A DNA stretch of 64,000 nucleotides from assembly GCA_965649765.1 (NCBI GenBank), contig OZ287752.1, forward strand, positions 53,630,001-53,694,000, given 5' to 3'. Below the pieces are notes generated by a model. The model was not told the origin of the DNA. It did no database searches and saw nothing but the letters and a program-made list of their open reading frames with translations. The stretch comes from Bispira polyomma. Lineage: Eukaryota. Both the position numbers and the translations under genes were made by a program. Shown here piece by piece: positions 15,701 to 53,974 of the stretch. Every line of letters begins with the position of its first letter. Within the stretch, counting starts at the first letter, position 1.

Positions 15701-18700
15701 ATTTTGCCAAGGGACTGTCCCTTCATTTATGAAGTAGTCCATCAATGTGTTCCTTTGCTGTTTTGCTATTTTGCCCCTAGATCGATTCCTATCGTTGGCC
15801 AATTGATCCCCCACCAGCTGCTCCTCAGACTCAGGCGGATCATCTTAAGGGCTGGGGTCAGTTTGAAGCCTACCAGAGGATGCTGTTGCATGGTCGTCAG
15901 TAGAAGTTGGAACCTGCTGACCAATATACCGAAGGCATTCTGGACAACCCCCTTCCCCTTGATATCCTGTAATTACAGATCCTTTGGCGGTTAGTCAGTG
16001 ATCTCTTGAAGTAGGGTTTCATCAACCAGGACTTCAGGGCGAAGGCGTCGTCCTCCAGCAGGAAGTAGTTGACAACACGTATGGATCCCTCAAACAGTGG
16101 TGCAGGTTTGGTAAGCCCGATTGATATGTCTTCCAACTGTTCTTTTACTTCCGAGTAGTTGAATATTTGTGCGCCGGAACAGGAATCACTGATGATGGCT
16201 ACATGTTTCCCGTCAATACAGCTCACAGAGTAAGGGATTTTCCATCAGTTTCTGTAGACTTCTTCCGGCTTCAGCCAGTCAGAGGGGTGGTTTGGCAGGC
16301 TAGATTTTCTGTCTTGTATTCCTAGATAATGGCTTTACAGAGCTCTTGGATGAACTTGGTAATGCTTGATTTTCCCACCCTGAACTGATATAACAGGGAA
16401 CTGTAGCTCTCGCTGGTGGCCAGGTGCAAGTTTAAATCCAACATCTAAGGGCTTTCTGTACCAGGTTGTGGCTTTCTTGATATGGCGTTTGATCCTCTCC
16501 TTGATTTCCTGGAATAGGACTGACCTTTTCCGATGGTGGTCTTGGTTTCAATTCCTGTTGAGCTTTAGCCTTGTCTCTTTGATGTTGTAGTACGAGCATG
16601 AGGGAACACATTTCTAATTCAAAAAAGACTAAACAATCCCCTAATCTCCTCAAATATTCTCTCTTGTCGATTGCTGGGATTATCCTCAATTAGTTACTCA
16701 ATATTACATAACTTTTAGGGCTCAAAAAGGGTATATATAGGGTCAGACAGCGTCCCGACTTTATTTTAAATTTTTTTTAATCCTATAGGTCTGGATCATC
16801 AATCTGTCAGATCATATTGCCAATACATTCGATCCTAGGGCAATAGGTCACATCCTATCGCCAATAGGTTCGATCCTACCTGGGTAGAGAAGGTCGGGAA
16901 ACCTTGGAGTTCAAGGTCGTACAACCTTTAAGTTTGATCAGGATCGGTGTCCCGTAAAAATGGGGTACAATGAGGTTGATTGGGAAGGTTGCCCCACTTT
17001 TTTATTTTCCCGCCCCCAAAAAATTTCATTGATATCTTGGCCCCGACCGCCCCAATCTTAAAGTCAGGCCCATTTTGCCAATCAAGCTTGAATGAGGAAC
17101 CACCACTTACCTTGCAGTAAACAAAATTATAATAATTGAAACATTTCCTGTCGGGTATGAATGTCGGTAAAATGTTATGTAACTGTTTAGGGGAATTAGT
17201 ATTACCAAACAATTGATACAGACTTGAGTAAAGATATATCTTCTACTATACCTGCTATTGCTTCATCATTATTTTCTCCAGATAATTTCTGGTCAACATC
17301 TGCATACCCTTGTAGTAAACAAAATAGTACCAAACAATTGAGATATTTCTCTTTTTTTAATTTAGAGTTAATTTTAAATATTATGCCACTGTTTCGTGTA
17401 TCTAGTACAACTAACCTGTTCCAACAGACTGAATATAAAATAGTACTAAAATAATATTTGTTTAACACATATTTTAGTGGGAATTGTATAGCTACCTGAC
17501 ATAGCAAAAGCGTCATCAAACCCAGCATTTTCTTCCCCGGAAGCTTTGTCTCTAAAAATATTACCATTACAGTCTACAATTGTATAAACATAAAATGTGC
17601 ATATAAGATGAAAACATAAGGACTGGTAATAATAAAGAGAGCAAACATATTTACTTACGGTACACCACTATTCAGACGTTCTTGCCCTGTAAATCACATT
17701 ACATAGTTTGATATTACAGTATACAATAAAATTGCAAGATTGTTTCGTGCAGTTTGCTACATGTCTGGCAGTATTTTATATGATATAAATTGTCCACCAA
17801 AATATGACACAACAAATAATAAAACTTTTATTGTAACTGAAAAATCTGTAAATTTACTGAAATAATAGTCTGACATAATAGTTTTTATTACGCTTAAAAC
17901 ACCTAAAATGACTTGCCTTCTTTTCTGAATAATTTATTAATTCCAAGTTTATTTCTGTGAAAAACCACCAATCCAACCACTACAATGATCACCAGGATTG
18001 CAATCAGAGGACCAATTATAGCACCTATGTTAACTCCATCTTAAATAAGACAAGAATTGAACATATCAATATCTACCTACTCACGTATCTGTATATAATA
18101 GACAAGTGTAGTCAAATAATTAAAAAAACGAAAAGGTTTTACCTGGTCTGTATATAGGTGGATCAATTCCTTGAACAAAGGTTGCCATTTGATTGTTTCC
18201 TTCATAGACTTGGACACTTACTGAATATGATGCTTTATCATCAAATTCATCTGGAATTGTAACTCGCTCTTGAGTTGCGTTTACCGTACCATTAACAGGG
18301 TACACATGACTGTTGGCTGTCCCTTCCGCACTATAATTAAACTTTAAGCCCACAGCTACTTCTACCCTTTCCGATCTCTGTTGATTATAATCCCAGGTTA
18401 TTATCATTTCACTCGAAGAAATTGAGTCGATTTGAACGTTTTTAATATCAGGTAGACCTAAAAATTTAAAATAAAAACATTCTACAGTATTTTTTTAAAA
18501 CTAGATTTAATACAAAAAGTGTACATATTGTTTGTTAATTTCACTTCATATCGATCAATGTAAATATCGGTCTAACAATTTAATAATTGGAACACTTCAT
18601 CAATTTAAATACAAGGTGATATTTTTGCTCATGCTGAATTCATTTAAATTATGTTTACCTACATATTGTATTTGGGCAAATCATAGCATTAAAATTAATC

Positions 18701-21700
18701 TCACCAGTATTATAATGACAATCAAAAAATAGCAAACATTTAAAAAGTAAAAATATTTTTGAAATCATATATAGTTAACATAGTTAGAACAGAGCATCAC
18801 ACCTGTCTGTATGTGTTACCTGTTGTTTTGCTGTCACAACTGCAAACATATTCATTTGTTGTATTTATTCCTGTCCTCTGATTCTCCCCATGTATACGTA
18901 TACAATATTCTGTATGTGGCTGCAGTCTTTCAACAAGTACCTGAAGATGTGTACCTTCTATACCTTCTTGAGAACCCCGAAATGTCTGTATATATTGAAA
19001 ACTTGTGTCTGGATTACAATCTGGTTGACTGTGTTCACCAGATTTAATGGTGTAAATGACTGGAGGCATATTGCCACTACGACCTTCCTTCCACTGCACA
19101 GTGAGGGAAGAAGAGGTCATATTCGGAAGAATATAAAGATCAGTTGGTGATTCTGCTGGTCCTATTCAAGTAAACAAAACACTTAAAAATTGAAATTTGG
19201 TTTAATTTGAATGGCTGAATACTAAAACTTTTAAATCCCTTAGACATCCAACTAGCAGTAAAAGAATATTGGAAAGCAAAATTATTTCTTTTTATATGTG
19301 AAGAAAAATATGGAATTGTATAAAGTAGTATATGTTAAGAATTCTTTAACAAAATAAACAAAGAAAAATTAAAAATATGTGAGCAATCATTTAAAATTAG
19401 TAAACATTAAACAATGAACTACCAACAAACAAATTACGATAACATACCCATATTAAATAGAAGATACATACAACACATTCACATACCAAGTTCTCTCAAT
19501 TCTAAAGGAAAAGCCACTGTTCCTACTGTATTATTAACTTCACAATAATAAAAACCGAATGTTGAGTCATTTGTGAAAGCAACAGTATAGTTTTTCATTG
19601 TAGCGCCACTAATCTGTGAGGCTGTATCTGTCCCATTGAAATACCACTGGTAATTTGGCATTGGATTTGCACAAACTGGGCACTGAAGCACAACATTTAA
19701 TTCTTCAAATTCTGCTGCTTGGTATTTTTTGTCAGAATTCCATATTGCAGCATCTGTTGAAAATGTATATATATTGTAATCCTTACATGTATGATTTATT
19801 GAAGAGTGTTAAAACCATATAATACTAGTAATAACAATAAGTAATGGATTGATACCCATTAAACATACAGTGTGTTTCCACTATAACCGAGTTTGAGATT
19901 TTGGTTTCTTCTTCTCCAGCTGTAGTAGCAGTTGCCACACATTGATATACACTGTCATAATACACAACCCCTTCACAAGTATCAAATTGATGCTCGGAAG
20001 CCTTCCAATAAGATTCAAGTTTGTGTGCTTTACTTAATCCATTACAACCATTTTCACAAGCAATATCATTGGTTTCAGTTCCAAAGTAACGTTCATCCAA
20101 TTGTTTGTCATTTTTTTTTATGTACACAGTATTGATATTACTTGCTGATATGACACATGACAAGTTAAAATCACTAGATGTAGTTCCATTATAGACAGGG
20201 TTGTCCATTGAGAGTTTGAATTCTTCAAAGCTCACAGGGGCTAGAAAAAGTAAAAGCATTCAAATATTTACACATGGAGTAAAAAATCAATGAAAATTAT
20301 ATGACTTGTCTTTTAATGTTGTAACTATTACTATAATACAGTATAGTACCATACTTAGGCAAAAATAAAGTAGTACAATCTGAAATACCTTCTACAATTA
20401 CGTCAATGTCTTTTGATGAATTACTTGGACCTATGAAATTTCCTGCAATACAGTGATATATTCCACTTTCTTTGACACTAGTTGGAACAAAATCTTCCCA
20501 ATTTGTTGTGCCATCAATAATAGTATAATTATGAAGGAAACTTCTATTACTGTGCCATGCAATCCAAGAAGCATCAGGAACTCCAATTTCATTGAGTGTA
20601 CTTAGGTCACAGTATAGGGTGTAAGATTTCTCTATAGATATCGTGGAATCAGTAATTGATGCAACTGGCTCACCCTTTGGTGTATCTTTTGAAACAATAA
20701 AAAGTTTAGGCTATAATACTTTGATATATATGTTATAAATTTTATATGTCATCTGTAAAAGCTGTAATGCTGTGATACTCGAACAAAATAGCAAAATATT
20801 TGACCTGCAAACAATATTATTAAGTCATCAATTGCCATATAATGTCTGTATAAATATATTTCAGTACATACACTGTACAATAACATTCACTGAGGAGATA
20901 TCACCATTTCTTTGAACATTGCCACCACATGCTTGAAATTCATTTTCTGCTGTACATGTGAACATTCCAGCATCCTTGTATGTGGTAGATTCAATGTTTA
21001 AAGTCTGGTTCTCCTGCGAACCTGTAGGGTAACTCCAACCATAATCTATAATATTTGGTCTGGCATCAGCATAACAAGTCAAAGACAGTGGATTTCCTTC
21101 AACTACCAAAGTGCTACCAGTGACATTTACATTTCGTGGATGATCTGAAATAGAATTAAGGAGATGAACAATCGATTTCACTTCAGTAATTATATGTAAT
21201 TACGAAAACACAATCTGTAAATATAACATATATACTCACTGTGCTTATATTTAAACATAAATACAGGACTATAAGGCAAATGTCACACCAGCATATACAA
21301 TGTAATGCACAATATTACTCTATAACTAAAGTTAATGATCTCTTCCTGTAAAATTTTACAGATGGGCTAGTGATTTATCCTTAATGGTAATTATTTATAA
21401 TTTTGAATTAGTTTGGTCGTATTCACAAGTTATTTAACACATTGATAAACATATTTTAGGCAAGTTCCTTATGTATATATACAGTGTTACGTATATATCA
21501 TTGAACCAATTTCATATACATATTTTCAAATATTCATAATTGAAATAATTATTTTTTAAAAGTTTTGTCTGGATACAATTGATAACAATAAAATTACTAT
21601 GCAATATTGAATAATGTTTTTAGTGTTTTTTTTAGGAAAAGCTACATTTATTCTGGCTTTCGTGTAATAAAATAGCTTTGGTAATTTTGAAATTTATTCC

Positions 21701-24700
21701 AATCACCAATGTTATGACAATTGGTCAAATACCATATTTACAACATCTGCAGAACACCAAAGAAAAACCTCAGCTAATCTCGATACTTATGTGACATTAG
21801 TATTTAAAACTGGTAAACAGGAACCACTATGATACAATAAACACTCTCCGTTTAATTTACTGTTCAAAGAAAACAAGATTGAAGTGTTAATATCACAAAC
21901 AAATAGCAGACTTCAAAATAGAATACTGAAGTTCACTGAAATAGTGCATATCATGTGTGATTATATAGTATTTCCCATTCCTCATCTAATTCCAGTCTGG
22001 CAAAAATAGCTGATACACAACATGTTATGAAATAGTATGTTGTAATGATAAAAATAAGTTACTTACAGAGAACCTGTACCATAAGGTGTGATGATATTTT
22101 CCCTTCTTCAATACCATTCACTGCAGAACAGGAGTAGTTACCAATATTACTTAACTGGCTTTGACTGGTATTATACCATTGTGATGTAATCCCTGTCAAT
22201 TCACCATTAAAATGCCTGTGGAGATGTAGCACACATGTACATTATAGCTGTAATGATTTATATTGATATTAATTTGCAAGTGTGTTTAAGGGGTTGGGGC
22301 CATCTTACGTCACTATTATTGTTAATGATGGAAAAAAATACATGGCCATTTATCCGCTTCTGCTGACATATTATTACATATTAATGTTGTCTGTATGATA
22401 AGTCAACATTATACTATACATTTTAATGACATTATATACAGTGAGCGATGCCCCCTCAAAGCTGTGCCTGTGGTACAGCTTTTAGTATTACTTATACATT
22501 AATAACATCGCCATCCATATACATAAGTCAAAACTTAAACAATGTGGATAATTTAACCATTTAGAAAGAAAGCATAGAGAGACTGATCTATTTTCAGCAA
22601 GTGAATCTTTACACAATTATTTACATAATGTTGTTACCACACATATGAATATACTGGTGGGTTGCCTTGTCTTGTTACATTGCACAGTAAGTTCAATGGT
22701 TTTTCTTCTTCCACAATATGCTGAAGTCTACATGGTCCAACTTCAACTTCTCCCCCATCTATAATTATTTTATTATTTTCAGGTATTATTATTGCACAAA
22801 AATTGTTGCCCTTGTATATTTGAAGGTATAGAGTCACTAATGTTGTATTTGGTCCTCTTATTAAATGCCTTTGATTTTCACCACCTATTTTTGTCCTTTT
22901 AACCAATTTTAGTTTGGAAAAGTTAATCGTGTATTCACATATTATCCAATTATATTATCTGCCATTACCACTGTGGCAATAATGGAAGATGAACAAGCCA
23001 CTTTTAAATCACAATAACAACTGACACTACTTGATACTATTCATGTTATTATTTCTAGAAAGTTATTTTTGGAGTTTTTAAAATTATTTATAAAATATTA
23101 AACTTGCAAGTAAAATCACTTACATAAAATGTTTAACTGATGACTGTCTATTCTTTGTTGCATTCCCTCCAGCTGTTTCACAATACAAGTTATATTTTTA
23201 CCATTGTCATCTCTCTGTGCTGAATATAGTAATGTACTTGAACCATTCCCAGGGGTGGCTTCATCGGTAATATTACTTCCATCTCCAATAAACCATTCAA
23301 ACTGTGCCGGTGGAAAACCACCCATAGAAGTACATGTAAAAGTTTCACTTGAAGTTATGGTGGTATTAAAATTACCTTCTAAATATGGGTCATCTGATAA
23401 ATCTGAAAAAAAAACATAACAGTTTAGTTATCATATATGTACACATATATATCAATAAAAAGTTGAAGTTTAAAGGCAATGTTACTCTAAAATATGTATC
23501 CACATTATTTACTACATAAACTATGTTTTCCATATTAATCTTGTGTATGATTATGCTATATAAACTATGGTAGCATTCTCATTAAAATCCAGAAAATAAT
23601 AGCTTAACGAAAAATACATTACTTTTATAAAATACTTGAGTATATTAAGTATTACTTTATATTTTCATTATCTGAAAATAAATAAAAAGCTCTTACCATA
23701 CACCTGAAGAAAATAAGTAGCATTTTCACTAGTCTCAAATCTACAGACCCAGTCTCCAGACATGCCAGTAGTTACTCCTGATACTGTGTATGATACACTT
23801 TTAGTTAAGTCAGGACACACTTCATCTACATTTGGTTCTGTGGAATCACATTTACAAGAACCTGGATCTATGTCATAATAACAGGCTTCATCTTGCAAAC
23901 AGTCAAATGTACAGCTTTGACCAGGCAATTGTCCAGGCCAGGCTATGCGCAAAAACTCAGACTCTGACTTTGGGGTATCTAAACTACAGTTTAAAGTTAT
24001 TGTGTCACCAATTTTAACAGATTGAGGTTGGATGGTAAATGTAAGACTGCAGCAGCCTGAAAATAATATAGTTATTTGACATTGTGAATAAATTTTGTGC
24101 CAGGTTAAACTGGTTAAAAATAAATGGTTAATTTTAAGGTGTACCAATCTGTACATTTGGAAAAAAGCCTTATCATTGTACAGCACAAATATTACAATAT
24201 ATATATTTCTATTAATATAATATTAAACAACCTTGACCACATTTTCATGTGTAAAAGTCATAACGTAATAGACAATTTCTGGAAATACAACTGATTCAGT
24301 TTTGAGTACCAGTAATCATAGCTAAATAGTTTGTGTTGAAAATATGACAATTACCGGAATATTCGCCAAAATTGTTGCAGAAAAAATGAAATATCAGGAT
24401 CAGTGTCTCACTCTAGCTTGTGAACTTGATTTTGTTAAAACATCACTGAAAAGATTGGTATGGGGCAGATGAGTTTATTACTATTTCTATATTTGATTTA
24501 CATACTGTAAAAATAGTAAACACATATAAAGTCATCTTTTACTGTATACTAACGATCAACTTTTTTATGAATCAATTTTATTGGGCAATTGTACGTACAT
24601 ACATACATAAGAATATATTTCTAAACTGCAAAACATTTCTTTGATCTCAATACAATGGAATGCCAGTAGCTTTGCTTACAATACTAGGAAATAGGTTTTT

Positions 24701-26925
24701 TGAAGACATCATACAGATCAAGTATACATCAAACTGGTTATATATGCATCATAATATATGTAAAAATAGAACCTCAAACTACATCTTTTACTGTAAAAAT
24801 TTTACCCTTAGACCTCTATCGCTAATCTCACCATCAGTGGACTGTGCACAAGAGGATCCCTTTAGGGGATTGCTAGTTCAGTCTACACCCATTAGCGAAT
24901 GTAATCATATAACTCATTTTATATCTATCCCTTTATTAACCAATCACATCAATTATCACCTGTGACCTCTACCTTTGATGTGCTATCCTTCATATTGCAT
25001 TCTGAACTCCACCAATTACATGCTTTATTTTGTGGTTTGCAGCCATACCATATTCAAATTTGGACTCCCTTATCTTGGGCGATCACAATGTAATACCTCT
25101 GTTCCACTATGCCAAACATGGCCCCCAATTGTTACGATTGTAAGATCGGAGCAATTATCGGGGGGTTCTAATGACTTTTCATTCCAATCGGGGAGGTCAC
25201 AGAGGTTTTCAAACATGTTTTGAGTCAGTGACTGACAATCTCAGATACCAGAACATAGACACTCCTGATCAGATCTCACCTCTTAATCCAGATGCACAGT
25301 AAACGAATTCCACCCTGAACACTCCAACCGAAGCTGTTCCAAGCAGCCAGCACCAGCAGCAACCACCAAGGTGTAGATACCAACCTCTCTTCCTCCTCCT
25401 CCTCCTCCTCCTGAGGTTTCTTCTTGGCTCAGTCTTAGGTGTAGACTCAAACTTGGTAGTTTTTCCAGGGCACTGCCCCCTCTTTGGTGAAATATTGCAT
25501 GAGTAGCTCTCTCTGTTCTTTTGCTGCCCTGCTGGGATTTCTACAGTTGGGTGGGTTGTTTCTTCCTACACGTGCTGCTATTGGTGGAACAGGTGAGTCA
25601 TCTTCTGGATTACCTGGATTAGCCATGTTGATAGCTACGGTCCTCAGTACATTGAGCAGGACCACACATGCTAAAGCTATGGTGGCCACCACTGATCGTT
25701 CCTGAATCCAGAGACCATTGACTTATCTTTAGCAATCGGGGAGGTCAGGAGCAAAAAAAATGTTGTCCTGACAACTAATCGGACCGATCAATCGTAATGC
25801 TAACAACTTATCGGGCGGTTATATGACTTATCTTACAGGTCGTGGTGATGCATATTCCCTCCATTTTTTCAAAAGATCGTTGGAAAATGCCAAAGATTGC
25901 TCACAATCATATTATCATATAATGCCCACCATTCGTGATAGTGTAACAGCACAGAAACGTTGAATTATTTAAAATATAAACAGCCCAGACAATATGCTGC
26001 TGCTCCCTCTCAGCTTTGTTTTAAGCATGTGCTACTTATTGCCTCTGGAATGTTTATATTTGACATTCTAAGGAATCCAAAGAATGCTGTGAGAAAAATT
26101 CATCTAAAGAGAGCAGGTTCCTTAGGAGAGAGCAAGGTTGTGATATTCTCAATAGCTGGTGGTCATTGAACACATCTTTTGGTGATGGCTTAAACGATAA
26201 CTCATGAATATTCTGTTATTCTGAACCAGGAATTCTAAAAAATACTATAACTGAATGGATTGTGATGTCCAGGGGACTCACATAGTAAATAAATGAAAAA
26301 AAAAGGTTTAAACTTGGTCCCTGTATACTTTAGTGGTTAAAGGTCGTAGTGTGGAATATTTTCAAAGCTGCCAGAGCCAGTGAAGCAGACACAGTAGTAT
26401 AACCTACAATTATACAGTGTAGTCAAGGTTAAAATATTTAAGTGGAATATGTCTAAATGTGAGGTTGTCTAGAGTTCCAACTATGTCTTCTAAGACATGG
26501 AGTAGGTGAAAAAAATGTGGTGGTGTTAGTGGTGTGCCGTTGCTACCCGTTTTCTCTTCTACTTTTTGAAGCCATTTAGTGATTTAGTTTTTAAATGCTT
26601 CTAAGAGACGCAAAATGGAGAGCATTTCTGAGAAGTTTTGCTGTTCTAACTCAGAAGTGAGATTACCTGTAGCTTGAGTTTGTACAGTGGTTGGGGATCT
26701 TCTTGATATTCAGCAATATTTGGCATCACAAACAAAAATATAAGTCAAAATATGGTCCAACAATCTTAATTGATATAATTATTATATACTCATTCTCAAT
26801 GCATCTTGGAAATATAGTATAAGGCGTTTGGAAATACAAGTGCAGGGTTTTGGTAAAATAAATATGAACTTACCTATTTGTACAAGTGAACAAATTACAT
26901 ATCCTGCGAAGAATGTGCTCTTCAT
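9549..26925 (-). CDS. Gene A: IgSF receptor, SP + 7 Ig + 2 FN3 + TM + ITIM/ITSM-bearing tail (nephrin/hemicentin-like architecture), ~1197 aa, 20 exons
   Basis: Exons (minus): 26874-26925, 23697-24056, 23124-23402, 22638-22758, 22067-22215, 20872-21144, 20389-20685, 19869-20240, 19487-19753, 18820-19161, 18143-18457, 17917-18039, 17659-17686, 17496-17551, 17252-17308, 11766-11810, 11591-11656, 11215-11289, 10701-10789, 9549-9776. All have AG acceptors and GT donors (one GC), phases chain correctly, total 3594 nt, no internal stops seen. Confidence 0.88.
10701..10789 (-). CDS. Gene A tail exon (NPYDDV, KPTIAAKPK)
   Basis: tgtgcag|GT GAC AAT CCA TAT GAT GAT GTT...CGG|gtatgt. Confidence 0.8.
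10863..11171. mobile_element. PIF/Harbinger (Tourist-like) MITE
   Basis: ~24-bp TIR (core CTGGTCACACCTACACGTGCT) with 3-bp TSD CTA/CTA; same family as 34006-34616. Confidence 0.8.
11215..11289 (-). CDS. Gene A tail exon (DAYAQVDKK)
   Basis: gtacag|GT GAT GCT TAT GCC CAG GTT...ACA G|gtatgt; 75 nt, phase 1-1. Confidence 0.8.
11591..11656 (-). CDS. Gene A tail exon (ITIM VTYAEV)
   Basis: ttttttacag|AT ACT GCA GCT GTC ACA TAT GCT GAG GTT...GCG G|gtactg; 66 nt, phase 1-1. Confidence 0.8.
11766..11810 (-). CDS. Gene A tail exon remnant interrupted by Harbinger (DVDKKPSEYTIKATS)
   Basis: Paralogous to exon 17252-17308. Donor CAG|gtatca intact; original acceptor stranded at 17111-17112. Confidence 0.55.
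12463..13370 (+). pseudogene. Harbinger Myb/SANT-like (MADF) DNA-binding protein, disrupted
   Basis: EEAVVEFVKDNKVLYHKRHKQFKDRFLKERLWEDLA...VKTWFESQCTR..KKSGQGA; in-frame stops and frameshift. Confidence 0.8.
12615..12761 (+). repeat. 21-bp minisatellite x7 (GGGATTGATGGAATCGTGCCA), coding GLMES(C/S)Q
   Basis: Seven adjacent units, in frame within the MADF ORF. Confidence 0.92.
13368..13632 (+). mobile_element. 3' fragment of an LTR nested in the Harbinger
   Basis: Reverse-complement match to 54626-54882; ends ...GTGACCGTAACA; contains AATAAA. Confidence 0.7.
13891..14120. repeat. ~110-bp tandem repeat, ~2.2 copies, inside the Harbinger
   Basis: AAACAAACAGAT..CAATTCACACATAC..ATATCATTGGCCC..ATATTAGCC repeated. 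Confidence 0.8.
15697..16440 (-). pseudogene. Harbinger DDE transposase (HARBI1-like), disrupted
   Basis: HLATSESYSSLLYQFRVGKSSI, CIDGKHVAI, DDAFALKSWLMKPY, NYRISR..NAFGILVSRF, GTVPWQ; frameshifts and an internal deletion. Confidence 0.85.
17252..17308 (-). CDS. Gene A tail exon (GYADVDQK)
   Basis: tactacaag|GG TAT GCA GAT GTT...GCA G|gtatag; 57 nt. Confidence 0.75.
17496..17551 (-). CDS. Gene A tail exon (DKASGEENAGFDDAFAMS)
   Basis: tttttag|A GAC...TCA G|gtagct; phase 2-1. Confidence 0.7.
17659..17686 (-). CDS. Gene A 28-nt micro-exon (QERLNSGV)
   Basis: tttacag|GG CAA...CC|gtaagt; phase 1-2 bridges its neighbours. Confidence 0.7.
17917..18039 (-). CDS. Gene A transmembrane exon (IGAIIGPLIAILVIIVVVGLVVF-HRNK)
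   Basis: Hydrophobic stretch followed by basic residues; GC donor AAG|gcaagt. Confidence 0.85.
18143..18457 (-). CDS. Gene A FN3 domain 2
   Basis: PDIKNVQIDSISSSEMIITW...SYSVSVQVY; canonical splice sites. Confidence 0.85.
18820..19161 (-). CDS. Gene A FN3 domain 1
   Basis: PAESPTDL..TSSSLTVQW..LQPHTEYCIRIHGEN. Confidence 0.9.
19487..19753 (-). CDS. Gene A Ig7
   Basis: LQCPVCANPMPNYQWYFNG...FGFYYCEVNNTVG. Confidence 0.9.
19869..20240 (-). CDS. Gene A Ig6 (atypical)
   Basis: FNLSCV...YDSVYQCVA; canonical splice sites. Confidence 0.88.
20389..20685 (-). CDS. Gene A Ig5
   Basis: YTLYCDL..GVPDASWIAW..ESGIYHCIAGNFIG. Confidence 0.88.
20872..21144 (-). CDS. Gene A Ig4
   Basis: EGNPLSLTCYADARP..YGW..DAGMFTCTAEN. 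Confidence 0.9.
22067..22215 (-). CDS. Gene A Ig3 second half
   Basis: HFNG...GNYSCSAVNGI; ccacag| acceptor, |gtaagt donor. Confidence 0.85.
22638..22758 (-). CDS. Gene A Ig3 first half
   Basis: EEEKPLNLLCNVTRQGNPPVYSYVW (TG|G split codon). Confidence 0.85.
23124..23402 (-). CDS. Gene A Ig2 (CD80-like C2-set)
   Basis: TFTCTSMGGFPPAQFEW...RDDNGKNITCIV. Confidence 0.9.
23697..24056 (-). CDS. Gene A Ig1 (V-like, Cys-rich)
   Basis: GDTITLNC..IAW..MSGDWVC; ttttcag| acceptor, |gtaaga donor. Confidence 0.9.
24836..25090 (+). mobile_element. 5' terminal fragment of an Ngaro-like YR element
   Basis: TGCACA..CCCTTTAGGGGATTGCTAGTTCAGTC as at 37585 and 5739; AGCGAATG.AAT and GCTATCCT.CATATTG shared with 5810-5920. 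Confidence 0.55.
25094..25953 (-). mobile_element. Internally deleted PIF/Harbinger derivative in gene A intron 1
   Basis: Transposase C-terminus at 25447-25692 (IALACVVLLNVLR...QRELLMQYFTKEGAVPW); imperfect TIR CTGTT(C/A)CACTAT. Confidence 0.65.
26874..26925 (-). CDS. Gene A signal-peptide exon (MKSTFFAGYVICSLVQIG)
   Basis: ATG...ATA G|gtaagt, phase 1; joins Ig1 to give MKSTFFAGYVICSLVQIGCCS-LTFT. Confidence 0.75.
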
Positions 26926-44811: not shown

Positions 44812-45997
44812 ATGGATGACAGTTATTTGGAAGCAACCCCAATCTTCTCTGACAAGAGAAGAGAAAGGCATTGGAGGACAGCCCAAAATTTCTATTCAGT
44901 AAGGCTGAACTATCACAATTATTAGATGAGAAATTAGAACCTTTAAAAAGTGACATTGCCGGTCTTAAAGACTCTTTTGCAGCTGATAAGCTTAAAAATC
45001 TTGAGCATGAAAATAGTGAACTTAAGTCAGAGCTGAAACTGTTGAGAGAAAAAGTAACTTCAAATGAACTATTTCTACGAAAAAATAACATTTTCTTCTA
45101 TGGTATGGCACCCAGGGAGGAGAAGACTCTGAAAGTCTCCTGCTAGGCATCCTACGCGAAATACGCCTGGATTTTAATTCCAGAACCTTTGAGCGAGTTC
45201 ACAGATTGGGGTTTCCAAAGAGAGGCCAAAATAGACCCATTATTGCCAGAGTAGCGCATTTCAAAGACAAACTGCTAGTTTTTTCCAAACGCAGAATTCT
45301 GCAAGAGAAAATCGGGATTAATATCAGTGATGATTACCCCAAGGAGATGACGAATAAACGCAAGCTGCTATATCCAATATTAAAACAAGCACAGAGTAAG
45401 GGATATAATGTGCAGCTTAAAGGTGATAAACTTTTCCTAAATAGACAGATGTATACTACTGACTCCCTTGATAAGCTACCAGATGATTTGAAGCCGGAAC
45501 ACGTTTTCACACCTTCAAAAAATGGCATCACAGCCTTTTTTTACTGAAGTGTCGCCCCTGTCAAACCACTTTCCATGTGTTTTCTCAGTAACAGGAGAAG
45601 TGTTCAACTGTACTGAACAATACTTAATGAAGCATAAGGCAATAACATTCAAAGACAGTCGCACAGCCGATATGATAATACAGAAAAAAGAACCAGCAAG
45701 GCAGAAGGCAATGGGGAAAAACATTAAAAACTTTGATAGTAAGGTGTGGAAAAGTGTTTCCCAAGAGACAAGCATAGAGGACTCTCAGCAAAGTTCAAGC
45801 AAAACCAGTCGTTGACAAAATTCCTTCTTGCGACAGGTGACACATAAATTGTGGAGGCTAACAGGGCAGACTCTCACTGGGGTGTGGGACTAGGTTTGTA
45901 GGACAATAAACTTTGGGACTCTAAATATCACACTGGAAAGAATCTTCTGGGTCAACAGCTAATGACGCTCAGAGCCGAGCTCAAAGTGAATGACTAG
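44812..45997 (+). pseudogene. LINE ORF1: coiled coil + L1-type RRM/CTD + C-terminal NADAR (YbiA-like) domain, frameshifted
   Basis: NNIFFYG, FERVHRLG..RPIIAR..ISDDYP; then SPLSNHFPC..TEQYLMKHKA..AKFKQN..LLATG..IVEANRADSHWGVG..GKNLLGQQLMTLRAEL. Confidence 0.85.
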
Positions 45998-47626
45998 GAC
46001 ATAAATCACAGTTTTGTAAAAAAAGAAACAAGTAAAAAGCTGGTAGAGTAAACAGAAACCAGTAAATTTAAAGACTGGTAGTACTTTAAATCTAATATAG
46101 ATGGGCTCATTAGTAATTATATTAAAACTATTTTTGGCTATTTGAAAAGCATATTAACTTCTGCAGTTGAATTAGAAAATGCAAATGCTACTCTTGTTTT
46201 GAGTTAAATTGTAAATATGCTAATATCACTGGAAAGGGCTGTTACGAGTTTTCAGAATCCAGTAAATGTACAAATTGGTAGTAATTTAAATCTGAAATAA
46301 CATGCCTAATTTATGACTAATTATAGTAAAAACAAATTTGAGTATCAAAAATTTGTGTTAGCTTTGGATACTGAATTAGAAAATGCAAGAGTAATCCGAA
46401 GATTTCAACCAAAATATTGTGGAGTAAATCTGCTGTTACAGTACTGGATACTAAGGGTGTGACGAGGACCTAAATGTGAGCTCTTGGTGATCGCGGAAAA
46501 GGCTGGCATGAGCTTTTAAAAACCAGTAAATTTTTAAATTGTCAGTACATTCTTATCTATATTTAATGTAACATGCCTAAATTATGGCTAATTGTAGGTT
46601 TAAAATAATGTGTTAGTTTTGTTAAAGTAATGTCAATTTTTGTTACTTATTATTAGAAAACATAAATGTTCTTTTTTTTATCTCCTTTAGAGTGAGATCA
46701 CCAAATGGTTAAAGTAATTAGTCAGCTGTTTATCTTGCCAGGGGAGCACTGTTATTTTGATGTTAATATTCAACATGGAAAGCTTTCATTTAGTAAAACA
46801 TGCTGTCACATTTGAAATATCATCTACTATTGGTAGAATGACTTTTGGTTTTTTTAGTTAAATTGTAAATATTCCAGCTTCACTGGTACAATGTATTATG
46901 ATCTGTTTCAAAGATTTCAACCAAAATACTGTTGTAGTATATATGCACTTACAGTAATGATTACTAGATACAACTTAGATAGAGCAAGAGTGCAAGAGTG
47001 CCTCAGATAAAATTACTTGTCATTTGTTTTACCCGGGAACACTATTGTGTTTGATGTTAACACTCAATGTTAACGTGAACATTAATGCAAAGAGTTCACC
47101 TATTCAGTGTATTGTAATTGAGTTGTATGCATAAGATCAAAGATTTTTTGGCTTTTCACTTGGTTAGTGCAAGACTGCCTTAGTTAAAGTAACATATCAG
47201 TTCTTTGTTTTGCCCGGGAAACACTATTGTTTTGATGTTAACACTTATTACTTATGCGAATGTATTTGGATTACTTTGTTGGCATTAGATCATTCAAATA
47301 CCTTTTAATATCCAAAGTATTGTATACAAGGGAAGCTTGTACAAGAATTATCTCACAATTACTTATCATGTTTGTATCTAAGTGCTGGTGCGTGTTGTGG
47401 TTTTTTTTATTGTAACAAATGCCATACTTTGTGGTTCAATACAAATGAAGAATTATTTGTCAGTAGTAGAAAATATTCATGTTGTGAAAAGTTTTGTACA
47501 AGTATACAAAGTTTCATGTTTAAAAAGTATTTATTTTTTAATTATAACTTGTTGGAAACGATTGTTTGCGAATTGGTATCTCTGGTTCATTCTTCTTGTC
47601 TGTAGGGAGTCCCATAGTAAATTTCG

Positions 47627-50600
47627 ATGTCTAACATAGGAACTAAACTAAAAGTGTTGTCTGTGAACTGTCAAGGTCTACGTAACCAAACAAAACGAGT
47701 AGATGTTCTCAATTATCTAAAACATACAGGGGCAGGAATAGTATATCTCCAAGATACCCACTTAACCGAAAATGATCTTTTTGTAACTAAAAAAATCTGG
47801 AATAATGAGTGTTACCTACATGGTATAAAATCAAACTCAAGGCGAGTTGGAATCTTTTTCAACAATAATTTTGAATATAAAGTTCTTAGTTGTAAAAAAG
47901 ATGCTGAGGGTAATTACATACAACTGATTTTGACAATAGGCTCACTTAAAGTTAACCTAATTTCACTATATGGCCCGAATGTGGATAAACCAGAATTTTT
48001 TATGGATATCCAAGCTTTATTGGAAAATAACACCACTGACTACACCATTATCTGTGGGGATTTTAACCTTGTATTAAACCCTGATTTAGACAGCTATAAC
48101 TACAAGAATGTCAATAATCTAAAAGCGCTACAAACAGTGATCAAAACCATAAACGACTTTAATCTTATAGATGCTTTTAGACCTTTTCACCCAGAGAAAA
48201 AAAGATACTCGTGGAAAAAGAAGAGTCCAATTAAGCAGGCAAGGTTAGACTATTTTTTAGTCTCAAGTATTGTGACTGATATTATTGACAGCTGTAATAT
48301 TCGACCTAGCTATATATCTGATCATTCTATAGTAGAGCTTGACATAATACTAAATAAATTTATTATGGGGAAGGGGGTATGGAAATTTAATGTCGGTTTA
48401 CTGAAAAATGTAGAGTACTTAAATATGATTAACAGAATAATAGATGATGAGAAATACAAATATGCCCTCCCTGTATATAGTCTTGACTTTATTAAAGGTA
48501 CTGATAAAAACTTGGATTTTACCATAAAACCAGATATATTCTTGGAAATGCTTTACCTTAGAATAAGAGGGGAAACAATTAAATTTGCATCAAACCTTCG
48601 AAAAGACAATAATAAAAAAGAAAAGGAACTTATCAAGGATATAGAAAATATTGAATCGCAAGAGAGTGTGCCTTCACACCTTTTAGAAATCCTTTTTGAT
48701 AAAAAACAAGATTTAGAATGCTTAAGAGCAGAAAAAAATAAAGGGACAAATGATAAGATCACGAATGCAGTGGTTAAGTGAAGGCGAAAGGCCAACTAAA
48801 TTTTTTTGCAAACTGGAGAGTAAAAATTTTGTAGAGAAAACAGTTAAAAAAATGGAACTGACTGATGGAACAATTGTAACAAGTCAACACGAAATATTGG
48901 TTCACATAAAAGAATTCTACACAAACCTTTTTAAAAAAAGAAATCTCAATGATATTGATCTTTTGGATCTTTTTATGAATAGCAAAATTCCAAAAATTCC
49001 CAATATAGACTTAGGTTATGCTGTACGGGTGGAAGAAACTAGTGAGGTTTTAAAGTTAATGAAGAACAATATAACACCAGGTCTAGATGGCATTCCAGCC
49101 AACTTTCTAAAAGTATTTTGGCTTAGGCTATAATTTTATGTTACAAATGCAATAAATGCCCGTTTTCTGAAGGGAAGGTTATCTACCACATTGCAGCAAT
49201 GCATCATAACATGTTTACCTAAAGGCAATAAAGACAGAGCATTTTTGAAAAACTGGAAGCCAATATCACTTTTGTGTACAACATATAAACTGGCATCTTT
49301 TCAATAATAGCAAATAGGATTAAACCACATTTGGACTCAATTATCTCTAGATAACAAACAGGTTTTCTGTCGGGCAGATTTATAGGAGAAGGTACCAGAT
49401 TGATATATGATATATTACATTATTCAGAGAAAAAAGATGTATCTGGACTTTTAATGGCCATAGATTTTGAGAAAGCTTTTGACTCAGTCTCGTTGAAATT
49501 TTTGTATGAGGCTCTAAAATTGTTTGGTTTTAATGATACACTGATTAACTGGATCAAATTGTTTAACAAAGACATTACAGCTAGAGTACAACAATGCGGT
49601 TTTCTGTCTGAACCAATACCAATAGAAAGAGGATGTCGGCAGGAAGATCCAATCTCCCCTTATCTATTTATAATTGTCGCAGAGGTTTTAACAATTTTAA
49701 TAAATTTAAATGCTGATATTGCTGGCTTAAAAATTGGTCAGACAGTGTACAAAATAACACAGTTTGCAGACGACACAATCATTATTCTTCACGGTAGCAG
49801 GGATTCCTTGCAGGCAACATTGAGTGTGCTTGAGATTTATGGTTCCTTATCAGGTCTTAGGATGAACACAGAGAAAACTAAGGTTATATGGATAGGGCAC
49901 AAGCGATTTTCAAGAGAAAAATTAAATGTTTTTGTTTTATCTCACACCTACAATATTAATCTGAATATTTTAGAATATTTTAGAATAAGGTCTGTACTAA
50001 AAAAATTTATTTCAGAAAATTCGAAAAAGGAAACCATTTTGTACTACACAGACCACACCTGCCATTCTATGTGCAGCCCCTATTTAAGCAGAAAAAAGGC
50101 AGCAAGATATATTATAATTGTATGATTCAAGCTGAAAGGAAAGCGCCTACAAAGTGTGAGTTAAAATGGTAAAGGAAAATGAGCTCTGTAATAAATGACG
50201 AAATGTGGCATTCAATTTATAAAATTTGCTTTAAAACTATTCGAGATAATTCTGTTATACGGTTCCAATACAAAATTTTGTATAATATACTTGGAACACA
50301 TGATTACCTTTTTAAAATCAAGATTGAAGATACCAATAGCTGTCGTCTCTGTGGTCAACATGTAGAAACTACTAAACATCTTTTGTCTGAGTGTAAGTTG
50401 AGACAAGAATTATGGAATAATGCTAAAATCTGGATAAAAAATAAATTAAAATTTGAATTACACATTTGTGATATAACTAAAATTTTTGGATATGTTATAC
50501 AGGACCAAAATTATAAGCCATTGAATTTTATACTTGTTTTAACGAGAAAATATATCTTCTGGTGTGTACACAAGAAGGTCCCTTTAAATTTTTACTGTCT

Positions 50601-50685
50601 TGAAGAAGTAATAAAAAATAAATATTTAGAGCAAGAATACTTGGCTAAAATAAATTTGAATTATGACGACTTTAGAAAGGTATAG
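47627..50685 (+). pseudogene. LINE ORF2: APE endonuclease - reverse transcriptase - zf-RVT, disrupted
   Basis: SVNCQGLR, GDFN, RLDYFL, SDH; PGLDG, IDFEKAFDSV, GCRQEDPISP, QFADD; CRLC..HLLSEC. Stops, frameshifts and an apparent deletion near 49930. Confidence 0.93.
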
Positions 50686-51274
50686 GCAAGATGGAATAAC
50701 CTATTCCCGAAACTATAAAAATCTTAACTTAAATACTGATGTATGCTCTGTGTTTATCCTATTTAAGATCCAACAGGTTGTTAAAGCTATTTTGTATACT
50801 TAAAAATTAAAAAAATATCTAGTTATCATATGGAGTCAAATTGAACCACCACAGTTTGGTATTGCATTGTTACAATTTTTTCTTTGTGTAAATGTACATA
50901 TGTATATAGAATTTGAAAAATCTGCCATTAAAGAAGTTTTTGGGGTTTTTTTTGTGAGAGGTACAAATATCATGGATATCTCTGCTGTCGGGGGTATTCA
51001 ATATTTTTGTAAATGGCAGTGTAAAATAGTATAAATAAAAAAAAAAAAAAATGAACTTATACCTTATAACTTAAGTGGACTGATTTAATTATGAATGTAA
51101 TGTCAAACACTTCACCAACATACCGTCACATTGATTTCATTTGTCACTATTGTCTGATCTCATGATTCTATTCAACAGCATATTAAGACTCGGTGTATAA
51201 TAAATGGAGTATTATTAACAGAGTTAACATTCTATGTATAATTGTGTGGCTAAACAATGAAACATTTAACCTGT

Positions 51275-51560
51275 CTTGTATTTTCTTATCTTGTGTTACA
51301 TTGCTGGAGTCTTACATTTACCATTGAACCTAAATATGTTGAAATCGGTGGCACAATAACTTTAAACTGTAGTCTAGATACCCCAAAGTCAGAGTCTGAG
51401 TTTTTTCGCATACATAGCATAGCTTGTATTTTCTTATCTTGTGTTACATTGCTGGAGTCTTACATTTACCATTGAACCTAAATATGTTGAAATCGGTGGC
51501 ACAATAACTTTAAACTGTAGTCTAGATACCCCAAAGTCAGAGTCTGAGTTTTTTCGCATA
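51275..51560 (+). repeat. 138-bp tandem duplication with CATAGCATAG filler
   Basis: 51275-51412 = 51423-51560. Confidence 0.92.
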
Positions 51561-53974
51561 GCCTGGCCTGGACAGTTGCTTGGTCAAATCTGTACAGTTG
51601 ACTGTTGGTTGGATGAAGCCTGTTATTATGACATAGATCCAGGTTCTTGTAAATGTGATTCCAAAGACACAGATGTAGGCAGACCTTGTCCTGAATTAAC
51701 TGAAAGTGTATCATACACAGTATCTGGTGTAACTACTGACATGTCTGGAGACTGGCTCTGTGAATTGGAGACTAGTAAAAATGCTACTTATTCTCTTCAG
51801 GTGTATGGTGAGAGTATTTTCTTTTATTTTCACATTATGGAAATATAAAGTAATACATAATATAGTTAATTATTTTATAAAACATTTACACACACAAACA
51901 CAGGAAAAACTTTAGTTTATACTAATATGTAAGTATTTTTATTATAACCTGTTATTTTCTGGATTTCCATGTGAACATTTTTGCTACCATAGTTTATATA
52001 GCACAATCATATATAGATGAGATAAATATGGAGAACATGGGTTATGTAGTAAGTAATGTGATAATATATTTTAGAGTAACACTGCCTTAAGACTTAAACT
52101 TTTTATTTCTATATATGTGTACATAATTATATGATAATTAAACTGTTATGTTTCTTTTCAGATTTATCAGATGAACCATATTTAGAAGGTAATTTTAATA
52201 CCATTATAAATACAAGTGAAACTTTTACATGTACTTCTATGGGTGGTTTTCCGCTGGCACAGTTTGAATGGTTCATTGGAGATGAAGTTGACATGTGTAA
52301 TGTTACTGATGAAGCCACCCCTGGGATTGGTAAAAGTACATTACTCTATACAGCACAGAGAAATGACAATGGTAAAATATGACTTGTGTTGTGAAACAGC
52401 TGGAGGGCATGCAACAGAGAATAGACAGTTATCAGTTAAACATTTTATGTAAGTGATTTTACTTGCAAATTTTTATGTTTATATAATAACTCAACCACAA
52501 ATAGAGCTTACTAGTAATAATAGCATGAATAGTATTAAGTAGTTTCATTGTATGGTGATTTAAAAGTGGATTGTTTATCTTCCAGTATTGCCAATGTCGT
52601 AATGCCAGATAACATTACTAAATAATATGTGAATACACAATTAACTTTTAAAAATTGTAATTGGTTAAAATACCCAAAAAAGGCTGACAATTAAGGACAA
52701 GTAATCAGAAGACAAAATACTCCAATATTACCAAAACAATACCATCAAGCATGCAATGGCAACAGTTTTGTACAATATAAATACCTGGAAATATTAAAAT
52801 AATTACACATGGAGGAGAAGTTAAAGTTGGACCTTGTAAACCTAAGCATAGTGTAGAAGAAGAAAAACCATTAAACTTACTATGCAATGTAACAAGAGAA
52901 GGCAACCCAACAGTGCATTCATACATGTGTTAATAACATTATGTAAATGATTGTGTAAATAATTACTTGCTGAAAATAGATCAGTCTCTCTATGTTTTAT
53001 TTCTAAATGGTTAAATTATTCAAATCTTTTAAATTTTGACTTGTATATGTATATGGATGGCACCATTATTAGGGTACAAGTAATGATAGAAGCTTCGAGG
53101 GGGTATCCCTCACAATATTTAATGGTATTAAAGTGTATAGTATGATGTTGACCTACCAAGCAGACAACATTAATATGTAATAATATGTGAGCAGAAGCGG
53201 ATAATGGCCATGTAGTTTTCCATCATTTACAAAAATAGTGGCTTAAGATGGCCTGAACCCCTTAAACACACTTGCAGAATAATATCAGTATAGATAATTA
53301 CAGCTATAATGTGTGCTACATCTCCACAGGAACTTTAATGGTGAATTGGCATCGTTCACAACACCAACATTTTCTGTCAGCCAAAGCCAGTTAAATAATA
53401 CTGGTAACTACTCCTGTTCTGCAGTGAATGGTATTGAAGAAGGGAAGATATCATCACACCTTATGGTACAGGTTCTCTGTAAGTAACTTATTTGTATCAT
53501 TACAATATACCATTTCATAACAGGTTGTGTTTCAGCTTATTGTCTGAAGACTGAAAATTAGCTGAGGAATGGTAAATGCTAAGTAGTCACACATGATCTG
53601 CACTATTTCACAAACAGAATACTTTACAAGTAAAATTCATTATTATATTTTGAAGTCTGCTATTTGTTGTGATATTATCTCTTCATCCTTGTTTTCTTTA
53701 AACAGTAAGTGAAACGAAGAGTGCTCATTGAACAATAGTGGGTTACCGTTTATCAGTTTTGAATACAAATGTCACATAAGTACTGAGATTGGTCTTTTAT
53801 AGATGGTCTGCAGATGGTGTAAATATTGTATTAGAACAACTCTCATAACATTGGTGATTGGAATAAATTTCAAAATCACCAAAGCTATTTTAAAACACGA
53901 AAGACAGAATAAATGTAGCTTTTTCTAAAACAAAATACTAAAAACTGAGTATGATTCAATATTGTATAGTAACT

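What the first reader, a model, noticed from the sequence alone, without database searches (positions are those of the whole stretch)
18820..24056. A and B share a sharply bounded ectodomain cassette (Ig1 to FN3-1), introns included
Ig1 differs at about 27/119 residues and intervening introns align by eye. FN3-2 drops to roughly 40% identity; TM, tail exons, the intron upstream of Ig1 and the intron after FN3-1 do not align. This points to gene conversion or recombination placing one recognition module on two old signalling backbones. Because A and B are inverted, a crossover in the cassette would invert the interval and swap N-terminal domains between tails.
Basis: partly seen in the sequence, partly recalled or inferred. 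Interest (0 to 1): 0.78.

Follow-up and report, generated by a model that had tools for sequence, protein, structure and literature searches.

The report
Shared ectodomain cassette; one copy dead
Two head-to-head surface-receptor genes of an annelid worm carry the same nine-exon outer part, introns included, on unrelated inner parts, much like the paired immune receptors of vertebrates, but one of the two genes has since become a pseudogene.

Summary
A (minus strand, 24056-18820) and B (plus strand, 51448-58601) share an inverted 5.2-kb block: nine exons (Ig1 to FN3-1) and eight introns. Exons are 89% identical and introns 83%; dS is 0.18. Identity falls to random within about 10 nt of the Ig1 acceptor and the FN3-1 donor. 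FN3-2 is 36-38% identical in protein. That is the family's background level: an old paralogue, D, matches A at 39-48% in every exon.

So one non-reciprocal, in-register transfer put one ectodomain on two old backbones. Interlocus gene conversion or gap repair is the most likely mechanism.

New points:
- B is a pseudogene. It has frameshifts in Ig2 and FN3-2, a stop in FN3-1 and both Ig3a splice sites lost. Short-read contigs confirm the stop and the FN3-2 frameshift.
- Too few stops and exon indels, and equal protein change in A and B, show B kept its reading frame for most of the time since the split.
- Upstream of Ig1, B shares sequence with three older Ig1-only copies, so A's 5' junction is probably the derived one.
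- The perfect tandem duplications at both B edges are probably the splice-junction "mirage" repeats reported as common in this genome.
- The longest perfect A/B match is 52 bp, so inversion by crossover is unlikely today.

The closest analogue is Siglec-11/Siglec-16. B's "activating" tail is unproven.

The parts
18820..24056 (-). Cassette copy A: nine exons (Ig1 24056-23697, Ig2 23402-23124, Ig3a 22758-22638, Ig3b 22215-22067, Ig4 21144-20872, Ig5 20685-20389, Ig6 20240-19869, Ig7 19753-19487, FN3-1 19161-18820) and eight introns. The open frame is intact.
   Evidence: Pfam Ig_3/I-set/fn3 hits on several exons
51448..58601 (+). Cassette copy B, colinear with A. Exons: 51448-51807, 52162-52448, 52809-52929, 53330-53478, 56203-56475, 56673-56969, 57117-57488, 57674-57940, 58260-58601.
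26874..26925 (-). A exon 1 (ATG and signal peptide, phase-1 donor). Intron 1 runs 26873-24057; its last 500 bp are single copy and unrelated to B.
18143..18457 (-). A FN3-2 exon, the first exon of A's own backbone. It is 36-38% identical to B's and 42-43% to paralogue D's.
59066..59384 (+). B FN3-2 exon, 319 nt. A 2-bp deletion near 59320-59323 shifts the frame and leads to a stop at 59323-59325.
   Evidence: contigs of three runs from two samples agree
51275..51560 (+). Perfect tandem duplication in B: a 138-bp unit plus 10-bp filler, period 148. It straddles the 5' edge of the cassette. The extra partial Ig1 copy is 51302-51412. It shifts the frame if the ATG at 51257 is the start.
   Evidence: not checked in reads
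58541..58956 (+). Array at the FN3-1 donor of B: a perfect 197-bp duplication laid over an older 95-bp array (75% identity). The units hold the exon end plus the donor, so it is a 'mirage' splice-junction minisatellite.
   Evidence: a 227-nt unitig spans the duplication junction and depth is about doubled; term from PMC3087553
52374..52377 (+). B Ig2: an A-run one base shorter than in A, giving a frameshift.
52807..52931 (+). B Ig3a exon with both splice sites lost: acceptor AG to AC at 52807-52808, donor GT to TT at 52930-52931.
58451..58453 (+). B FN3-1: TAA stop where A has CAA.
   Evidence: unitigs of runs X1 and X2 cover it without a difference
51158..51301 (+). B sequence just upstream of the cassette. 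It includes an in-frame ATG (51257) and a signal-peptide-like ORF. It is 75-77% identical to the sequence upstream of three Ig1-only copies elsewhere in the cluster and is unrelated to A's intron 1.
53979..55990 (+). About 2 kb of extra, internally repetitive sequence in B's intron after Ig3b. A has 238 bp there. One part resembles 13369-13632.
45530..51051 (+). Young LINE upstream of B. Its 3' end at about 51051 is defined by at least 39 copies at 92-97% identity. The insertion is later than the cassette split. The 5' limit is taken from another note and was not checked.
59728..59871 (+). B TM exon: a hydrophobic helix with no charged residue, then a basic stop-transfer stretch. It is unrelated to A's TM exon.
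60315..60443 (+). B tail exon: two YxxL motifs 22 residues apart, which is not a canonical ITAM.

Best explanation
A and B are old, head-to-head members of a clustered Ig/FN3 receptor family of an annelid. At a time corresponding to about 0.18-0.20 neutral substitutions per site, one non-reciprocal event copied the whole ectodomain block, Ig1 to FN3-1 with its eight introns, from one gene into the equivalent place of the other. It replaced the resident exons in register. The most likely mechanism is interlocus gene conversion, or double-strand-gap repair, between inverted paralogues. The junctions lie at the Ig1 acceptor and the FN3-1 donor.

The result was one recognition module on two unrelated FN3-2/TM/tail backbones. 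A's backbone carries ITIM and ITSM motifs. Both genes then kept open frames and changed in protein at equal rates for most of the time since the event. B began to decay only recently, over roughly the last tenth to third of that time, and is now a pseudogene.

B shares its sequence upstream of Ig1 with older Ig1-only copies. That context therefore predates the A/B split, and A is probably the recipient, at least at the 5' junction. The perfect tandem duplications at both edges of B are probably 'mirage' splice-junction repeats, which other notes of this scan report as common in this genome, rather than scars of the transfer.

Shown: the block, its bounds, the divergences, B's lesions and the long maintenance of B's frame. 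Inferred: the mechanism, the direction and any function.
For: Sharp bounds and colinearity. dS of 0.177 is close to the intron JC distance of 0.197, which fits one event. Old paralogue D matches A at 39-48% in Ig4 to FN3-1 and at 42% in FN3-2, while A against B is 71-85% in the cassette and 36-38% in FN3-2. A's nearest relative therefore changes from B to D at the FN3-1/FN3-2 boundary.

The replacement is in register: exon count, phases and splice sites are the same in both copies. That argues for a homology-guided process.

B lesions are, with read support. Long maintenance of B's frame:
- 2 exon indels against about 41 expected at the intron rate, P 1.5e-15.
- 1 new stop against 10-11 expected under neutrality, P 1.6e-4.
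- Protein changes polarised with D: 16 on the A lineage and 16 on the B lineage.

Direction: upstream sequence of B against the Ig1-only copies is 75-77% identical. Ig1 dS is 0.145 for A-B against 0.20-0.27 to the Ig1-only copies. No later conversion patches are seen; the longest perfect run is 52 bp, about what chance gives. Other mosaics exist in the same cluster: L018 and L025 share about 7 kb from Ig2 onward at 76-87% but have different Ig1 exons.
Against: Old paralogues at 40-48% protein identity offer little nucleotide homology for strand invasion. Classical gene conversion between the pre-existing exons is therefore mechanistically awkward.

A conversion tract anchored in exons should leave the outer parts of Ig1 and FN3-1 at the old divergence. 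Yet high identity starts within about 3 nt of the Ig1 exon start and ends about 10 nt before the FN3-1 exon end.

The direction rests on small counts (10-17 synonymous differences) and on a roughly clock-like rate. Only half of the cluster could be read. No outgroup species and no RNA data were available.
Confidence: 0.6

Rival explanations
1. Non-homologous partial segmental duplication, i.e. classical exon shuffling. A 5.2-kb inverted copy made by template switching or end joining landed by chance inside an older paralogue. Selection kept it because all introns are phase 1.
For: The flanks share no homology at all. Inverted duplications are typical of replication-based template switching. 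A 5-nt match at the acceptor could serve as microhomology. Ig1-only copies show that partial duplications occur in this cluster.
Against: Both junctions fall within about 10 nt of the homologous splice junctions, and the resident exons were replaced exactly, Ig1 to FN3-1 for Ig1 to FN3-1. That is very unlikely for random breakpoints in a 2.8-kb and a 0.36-kb intron. No target-site duplication or filler is seen at A's junctions.
Confidence: 0.18
2. Junction-targeted instability. The process that makes 'mirage' duplications at splice junctions in this genome also breaks DNA at exon-intron junctions. Repair from a paralogue then yields exchange tracts that end exactly at exon edges.
For: Three of four mapped breakpoints in this Ig1 group lie at exon edges: the A acceptor, the donor of the Ig1-only copies (+14 nt) and the FN3-1 donor. 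The only two perfect long-period tandem duplications in 64 kb sit on the two cassette edges of B. Other notes of this scan report junction duplications as common in this genome.
Against: The argument is post hoc and n is tiny. Other mosaics in the cluster end 50-70 bp from exons, not at them. One Ig1 fragment starts in mid-exon. The cause of mirages is unknown (PMC3087553). A has no mirage at its junctions.
Confidence: 0.12
3. Recent whole-gene inverted duplication, followed by very fast divergence of the 3' part and of the 5' intron.
For: The two genes are neighbours with the same overall architecture.
Against: Neutral flanking introns should still align at about 83%, but they score as random. 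FN3-2 is at the family's background identity, and A's FN3-2 is closer to D's than to B's.
Confidence: 0.02
4. Transposon-mediated transduction (LINE 3' transduction or capture by a DNA transposon), or an assembly artefact.
For: A LINE lies upstream of B in the same orientation. A 99% identical inverted repeat flanks both genes.
Against: The LINE ends about 250 bp before the cassette, and at 92-97% identity to its copies it is far younger than the cassette. There is no poly(A) at the 3' edge. The outer repeat is a young element with at least 40 copies in the genome, not a palindrome arm. The 12-18% divergence and the short-read contigs of two samples exclude a false duplication.
Confidence: 0.03

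Closest known systems
SIGLEC11 / SIGLEC16 paired receptors of primates (PMC5701461)
   Same: Two Ig-superfamily receptor genes lie head-to-head a few kb apart. A genomic block of several kb, exons plus introns, encodes the N-terminal domains and is made alike by gene conversion, while TM and tails differ. One partner is inhibitory. The other is often a pseudogene allele (SIGLEC16P) and has acted as a donor to the inhibitory gene.
   Different: A different phylum and an unrelated family: 7 Ig + 2 FN3 against V-set + C2. The block is larger (9 exons, 5.2 kb). Conversion is not recurrent here; there was one old event and 12-18% divergence since. B has no charged TM residue and no canonical ITAM. 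The spacer is 27 kb.
SIGLEC5 / SIGLEC14 and CEACAM1 / CEACAM3-type paired receptors (PMC4042635, PMC2832619)
   Same: Partial gene conversion is limited to the segments that encode the ligand-binding domains. It homogenises recognition while different signalling is kept. [quoted passage not shown]
   Different: In those pairs the conversions are continuing and the genes are in tandem. Function and shared ligands are shown by experiment. Nothing is known here about ligand, expression or signalling.
Hydractinia Alr family, e.g. Alr2 / Alr30 (PMC9546547)
   Same: An invertebrate cluster of IgSF genes and pseudogenes with one domain per exon. Neighbouring genes have similar extracellular regions but unrelated cytoplasmic tails. 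[quoted passage not shown]
   Different: A cnidarian family with unusual Ig-like domains and a proven role in allorecognition. No sharply bounded block that includes introns is described in the passages read.
'Mirage' minisatellites of amphioxus genes (PMC3087553)
   Same: Tandem duplications that span an exon-intron boundary, at either the 5' or the 3' edge, with units of about 150 bp. They match B's arrays at 58541-58956 and probably 51275-51560.
   Different: This is an annelid, and the arrays sit on a pseudogene, exactly on the two edges of a transferred cassette.

Membership tests
Paired inhibitory/activating immune receptors | Two linked genes with closely similar ectodomain-coding regions but unrelated TM and cytoplasmic parts | tested here: met
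   Cassette 71-85% protein identity against FN3-2 at 36-38%; no TM or tail match
Paired inhibitory/activating immune receptors | One partner carries ITIM or ITSM motifs | tested here: met
   A's tail region holds a canonical ITIM near 11645 and an ITSM near 9680. This is a motif scan of open pieces only, with no expression or splicing data
Paired inhibitory/activating immune receptors | The other partner signals activation, through a charged TM residue that recruits an ITAM adaptor or through its own ITAM | tested here: not met
   B's TM helix has no charged residue. B's tail has two YxxL motifs 22 residues apart, outside the 6-12 spacing of an ITAM
Paired inhibitory/activating immune receptors | Both partners functional, co-expressed and binding the same ligand | tested here: not met
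   B is a pseudogene in this assembly. No RNA run was found. Ligand binding cannot be tested here
Interlocus gene conversion tract | A non-reciprocal, sharply bounded patch of young ancestry inside old paralogues, with incongruent relationships on either side | tested here: met
Interlocus gene conversion tract | Tract ends lie in sequence that was homologous between donor and recipient | tested here: inconclusive
   The ends lie at the splice junctions. Only a few nt of shared splice consensus are visible there
Unprocessed pseudogene (gene B) | Introns retained, with frame-breaking mutations | tested here: met
   1-bp deletion in Ig2, TAA in FN3-1, 2-bp deletion in FN3-2, Ig3a acceptor and donor lost. 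The stop and the FN3-2 deletion are seen in short-read contigs
Mirage (splice-junction) minisatellite | Tandem repeat whose unit spans an exon-intron boundary | tested here: met
   The units at 58541-58956 hold the last 45-61 nt of FN3-1 plus the donor and the start of the intron. 51275-51560 spans the former Ig1 acceptor position

The most novel reading that the evidence does not exclude
In this annelid, splice junctions are hot spots of DNA breakage or template switching: the same process that litters the genome with 'mirage' junction repeats. Repair from paralogues at these breaks exchanges whole exon cassettes with edges exactly at exon boundaries. This would be a built-in mechanism of precise exon shuffling. 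Here it produced a protostome counterpart of vertebrate paired receptors, with one ectodomain on an ITIM backbone and on a second backbone.
Probability: 0.12. Interest if true: 0.8.

Novelty: new member of a known kind. Interest (0 to 1): 0.5.

Why it matters
Copying a ligand-binding block onto a different signalling backbone is how vertebrates repeatedly make paired receptors (Siglec, CEACAM, KIR). In my literature searches I found no such case described for a protostome. A clear case in an annelid, in an unrelated Ig/FN3 family, would show that this evolutionary route is general. The case also shares the later loss of the second partner and the head-to-head layout.

The locus offers a dated example. 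Both genes were kept for most of the time since the transfer, so the chimera was useful. It also offers a test bed for why exchange tracts here end exactly at splice junctions.

As it stands it is a solid but single example. No expression, ligand or population data exist, and one partner is dead.

Tried and rejected
- The outer 99% inverted repeat (5733-6990 / 62838-64096) as arms of a large palindrome: rejected. It is a young element with at least 40 copies at 96-99% identity.
- LINE 3' transduction: rejected.
- Transposon insertions as the cause of the sharp bounds on A's side: rejected. 24057-24560 and 17500-18819 are single copy.
- Hidden homology in the flanks: none above shuffled controls.
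- Later conversion patches: none. The longest perfect run is 52 bp.
- Faster protein change in B: not seen, 16 against 16.
- Reading the rest of the cluster: only alternate 10-kb pieces of C5:53.55-53.90 Mb were delivered. Per-exon trees with all paralogues could therefore not be made. FN3-2 has only three members in the genome search, so no topology test was possible.
I took the coordinates from get_sequence instead.
- The large protein searches were not used. Exon-sized queries cannot see full-length relatives, and the claim does not rest on absence of relatives.
- No RNA run holds the stretch. The 148-bp duplication, the Ig2 frameshift and the Ig3a splice losses were not checked in reads, because the single read-laying run covered 56000-60500.
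Full report
**What is there.** The window is G000:C5:53630001-53694000 of a 1.04-Gb, AT-rich animal genome. Other notes of this scan call it an annelid; I did not test that.

Self-comparison shows three colinear inverted blocks that join 18820-24054 to 58602-51450 at 82-88% identity. A global alignment with 1.5-kb flanks gives 0.34-0.50 identity per 100 columns outside the block. That is the random level for this composition. Inside it gives 0.74-0.94. The switch occurs at A 24056 / B 51448 and at A 18820 / B 58601.

**Gene structure.** Gene A runs on the minus strand.
- Exon 1 (26925-26874) holds the ATG and a signal peptide and ends in a phase-1 donor.
- A 2.8-kb intron follows.
- Then come nine exons (Ig1, Ig2, Ig3 split in two, Ig4-Ig7, FN3-1), all with AG/GT sites and fitting phases. 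Together they give an open 819-codon frame.
- After them come FN3-2 (18457-18143), a TM exon and a tail with ITIM and ITSM motifs.

Gene B runs on the plus strand with the same nine exons in the same order. They are followed by its own FN3-2 (59066-59384), TM exon (59728-59871) and tail.

**Numbers.** Exons are 89.3% identical (JC 0.115) and introns 82.7% (JC 0.197). By the Nei-Gojobori method dS is 0.177, dN is 0.098 and the ratio is 0.55. The dN/dS ratio is highest in Ig1, Ig3b and FN3-1 (0.8-1.1) and lowest in Ig7 (0.28). dS is close to the intron distance, and there is no unusually long perfect run (longest 52 bp). The block therefore looks like the product of one event without later exchange.

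**The flanks are old.** FN3-2 of A and B is 36-38% identical in protein and about 50% in DNA. TM and tail exons do not match. The intron upstream of Ig1 and the intron after FN3-1 score within the range of shuffled sequence.

The yardstick is paralogue D, 145 kb away (locus L021). It matches A at 39-48% in Ig4, Ig5, Ig6, Ig7 and FN3-1, and at 42% in FN3-2. FN3-2 of A and B is thus at the family's background distance. A's nearest relative changes from B in the cassette to D in FN3-2.

A's flanks next to the cassette are single copy. Transposon insertions therefore do not explain the sharp bounds on A's side.

**B is a pseudogene.** Its lesions are:
- a 1-bp loss in an A-run in Ig2, at 52374-52377, which shifts the frame;
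- loss of both splice sites of Ig3a, AG to AC and GT to TT;
- TAA for CAA in FN3-1, at 58451-58453;
- a 2-bp loss in FN3-2 near 59320-59323;
- a perfect 148-bp-period tandem duplication in the first coding exon, 51275-51560. It breaks the frame if the ATG at 51257 is the start.

Contigs built from short reads of three runs (two samples) lie on B 56000-60500 without a single difference. Runs X1 and X2 (sample S1) cover the stop. All three runs cover the FN3-2 deletion. A 227-nt unitig in X3 spans the junction of the 197-bp duplication at about twice the local depth. These features are therefore not long-read assembly errors. The other lesions were not checked in reads.

**B was kept for a long time.** If B had drifted since the split, its 819 codons should hold 10-11 new stops; there is one (P 1.6e-4). 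Exons show 2 indel events against about 41 expected at the intron rate (P 1.5e-15). Protein changes polarised with D fall 16 on the A lineage and 16 on the B lineage. In Ig1, polarised with closer copies, A has 5 synonymous and 11 non-synonymous changes and B has 2 and 13.

Taking stops, frameshifts and splice losses together, B seems to have drifted for roughly the last tenth to third of the time since the split. This is my own rough estimate. The chimeric arrangement was therefore maintained, and presumably useful, for most of its history.

**Direction.** The Ig1 exon alone has three more copies 150-250 kb away: L024 2211-2567, L024 7194-7355 (partial) and L026 5361-5657 (broken by a 46-bp insertion). 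They are 83-84% identical to both A and B. They share with B, but not with A, 100-250 bp upstream of Ig1 at 75-77% identity. This stretch includes an in-frame ATG and a hydrophobic ORF. After Ig1 they differ from both A and B beyond about 14 nt.

Ig1 dS is 0.145 for A-B and 0.20-0.27 to these copies. B's upstream context was therefore already joined to this type of Ig1 before A and B split, which makes A's 5' junction the derived one. Older paralogues (L018, L023, L025) have an acceptor just before Ig1, as A does. The intron position itself is thus ancestral. The counts are small, and I hold this direction at about 0.6.

**Mechanism.** Both genes now carry the cassette, so the event was copy-and-paste, not a reciprocal crossover. 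It replaced Ig1 to FN3-1 by Ig1 to FN3-1, in register and in phase. That speaks for a homology-guided process: interlocus gene conversion or gap repair between inverted paralogues.

Against it, old paralogues of this family share too little DNA identity for ordinary strand invasion. In addition, the tract covers the terminal exons almost completely. High identity starts about 3 nt into Ig1 and stops about 10 nt before the end of FN3-1. A non-homologous inverted duplication that happened to land in register is the main rival.

A third idea comes from other notes of this scan, which I checked only in part. In this genome, exon-intron junctions are often copied in tandem ('mirages', a term from amphioxus; PMC3087553). 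B's array at 58541-58956 is such a repeat: an older 95-bp array and a perfect 197-bp duplication, with units made of exon end plus donor. The 148-bp duplication spans the former acceptor position.

These are the only two perfect long-period duplications in the 64 kb, and they sit on the two cassette edges. A has none. If junctions are break-prone, exchange tracts that end at junctions would follow. This is a hypothesis, not a result.

**The inversion idea.** A crossover within the cassette would flip 24056-51448, a stretch that holds A's exon 1, gene C, transposons and B's 5' end. It would also swap promoters and N-terminal parts between the backbones. With 12-18% divergence and no perfect match over 52 bp, this is unlikely today. 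It could have happened soon after the transfer, but nothing here shows that it did.

**Context in the cluster.** Mosaic genes are not unique to A and B. L018 and L025 share about 7 kb from Ig2 onward at 76-87% but have different Ig1 exons, and L018's Ig1 pairs with L023's at 80%. In those cases the bounds lie 50-70 bp from the exons, not on them.

**Comparison with known systems.** The nearest analogue is SIGLEC11/SIGLEC16. Those genes are head-to-head and 9 kb apart. A block of about 3 kb that encodes the N-terminal domains is kept alike by gene conversion. One partner is inhibitory and the other is often a pseudogene allele that has donated sequence (PMC5701461).

SIGLEC5/14 and CEACAM1/3 follow the same logic (PMC4042635, PMC2832619). 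Hydractinia Alr2/Alr30 shows similar ectodomains on unrelated tails in an invertebrate cluster (PMC9546547).

The present case works like these. It cannot be filed as a paired inhibitory/activating receptor, because B has neither a charged TM residue nor a canonical ITAM and is dead. Nothing is known of its expression or ligands.

**Verdict.** Three corrections apply. B is now a pseudogene, the opposite-signalling reading is unproven, and inversion is no longer likely. It is a new member of a known kind of event, of moderate interest.

Noticed in passing
L024:2211-2567, L024:7194-7355, L026:5361-5657 (C5:53836187, 53841175, 53879332): Three extra copies of the Ig1 exon alone, 83-84% identical to A and B. 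They carry B-type upstream sequence, and within the DNA read only transposon-like sequence follows them. One is broken by a 46-bp insertion and one is a half exon.
   Followed up: partly
L018:286-7204 vs L025:1793-8104; L018:8603-9032 vs L023:3448-3891: Another mosaic pair in the cluster. Two genes share about 7 kb from Ig2 onward at 76-87% but have unrelated Ig1 exons. L018's Ig1 instead matches a decayed copy in L023 at 80%.
   Followed up: partly
window 58650-58700: The degenerate exon-end copy inside B's older 95-bp array resembles A's present FN3-1 exon end (16 of 21 nt by eye) more than B's own (12 of 21). B's last three codons may have changed after the array arose. The sample is tiny.
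   Followed up: no
window 51257-51310 and the matching places in L024 and L026: An in-frame ATG plus an 18-codon hydrophobic ORF runs straight into Ig1 and is kept open in three diverged copies. In the L024 and L026 copies the acceptor-like CAG is still present. It is either a fused signal-peptide exon or the pyrimidine tract of the old intron read as protein.
   Followed up: partly
window 5733-6990 and 62838-64096: Two inverted copies of a very young repeat (99% to each other, at least 40 copies at 96-99% in the genome) bracket genes A and B. This is a coincidence of transposon insertions, not a palindrome.
   Followed up: yes
window 53979-55990: About 2 kb of internally repetitive sequence fills B's intron after Ig3b. 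Units recur at 53986-54124, 54479-54625 and 55454-55737, and one part is 81% identical to 13369-13632 near A's tail. It is probably a small non-autonomous element.
   Followed up: no
window 58416-58566, run X3: In the second sample the contig depth drops to 12 against about 80 around B's stop codon. That individual may carry a variant there; whether its B has the stop is unknown.
   Followed up: no
window 55954-55991 and 57587-57664: (TA)n microsatellites have expanded in two B introns where A has little or none.
   Followed up: no
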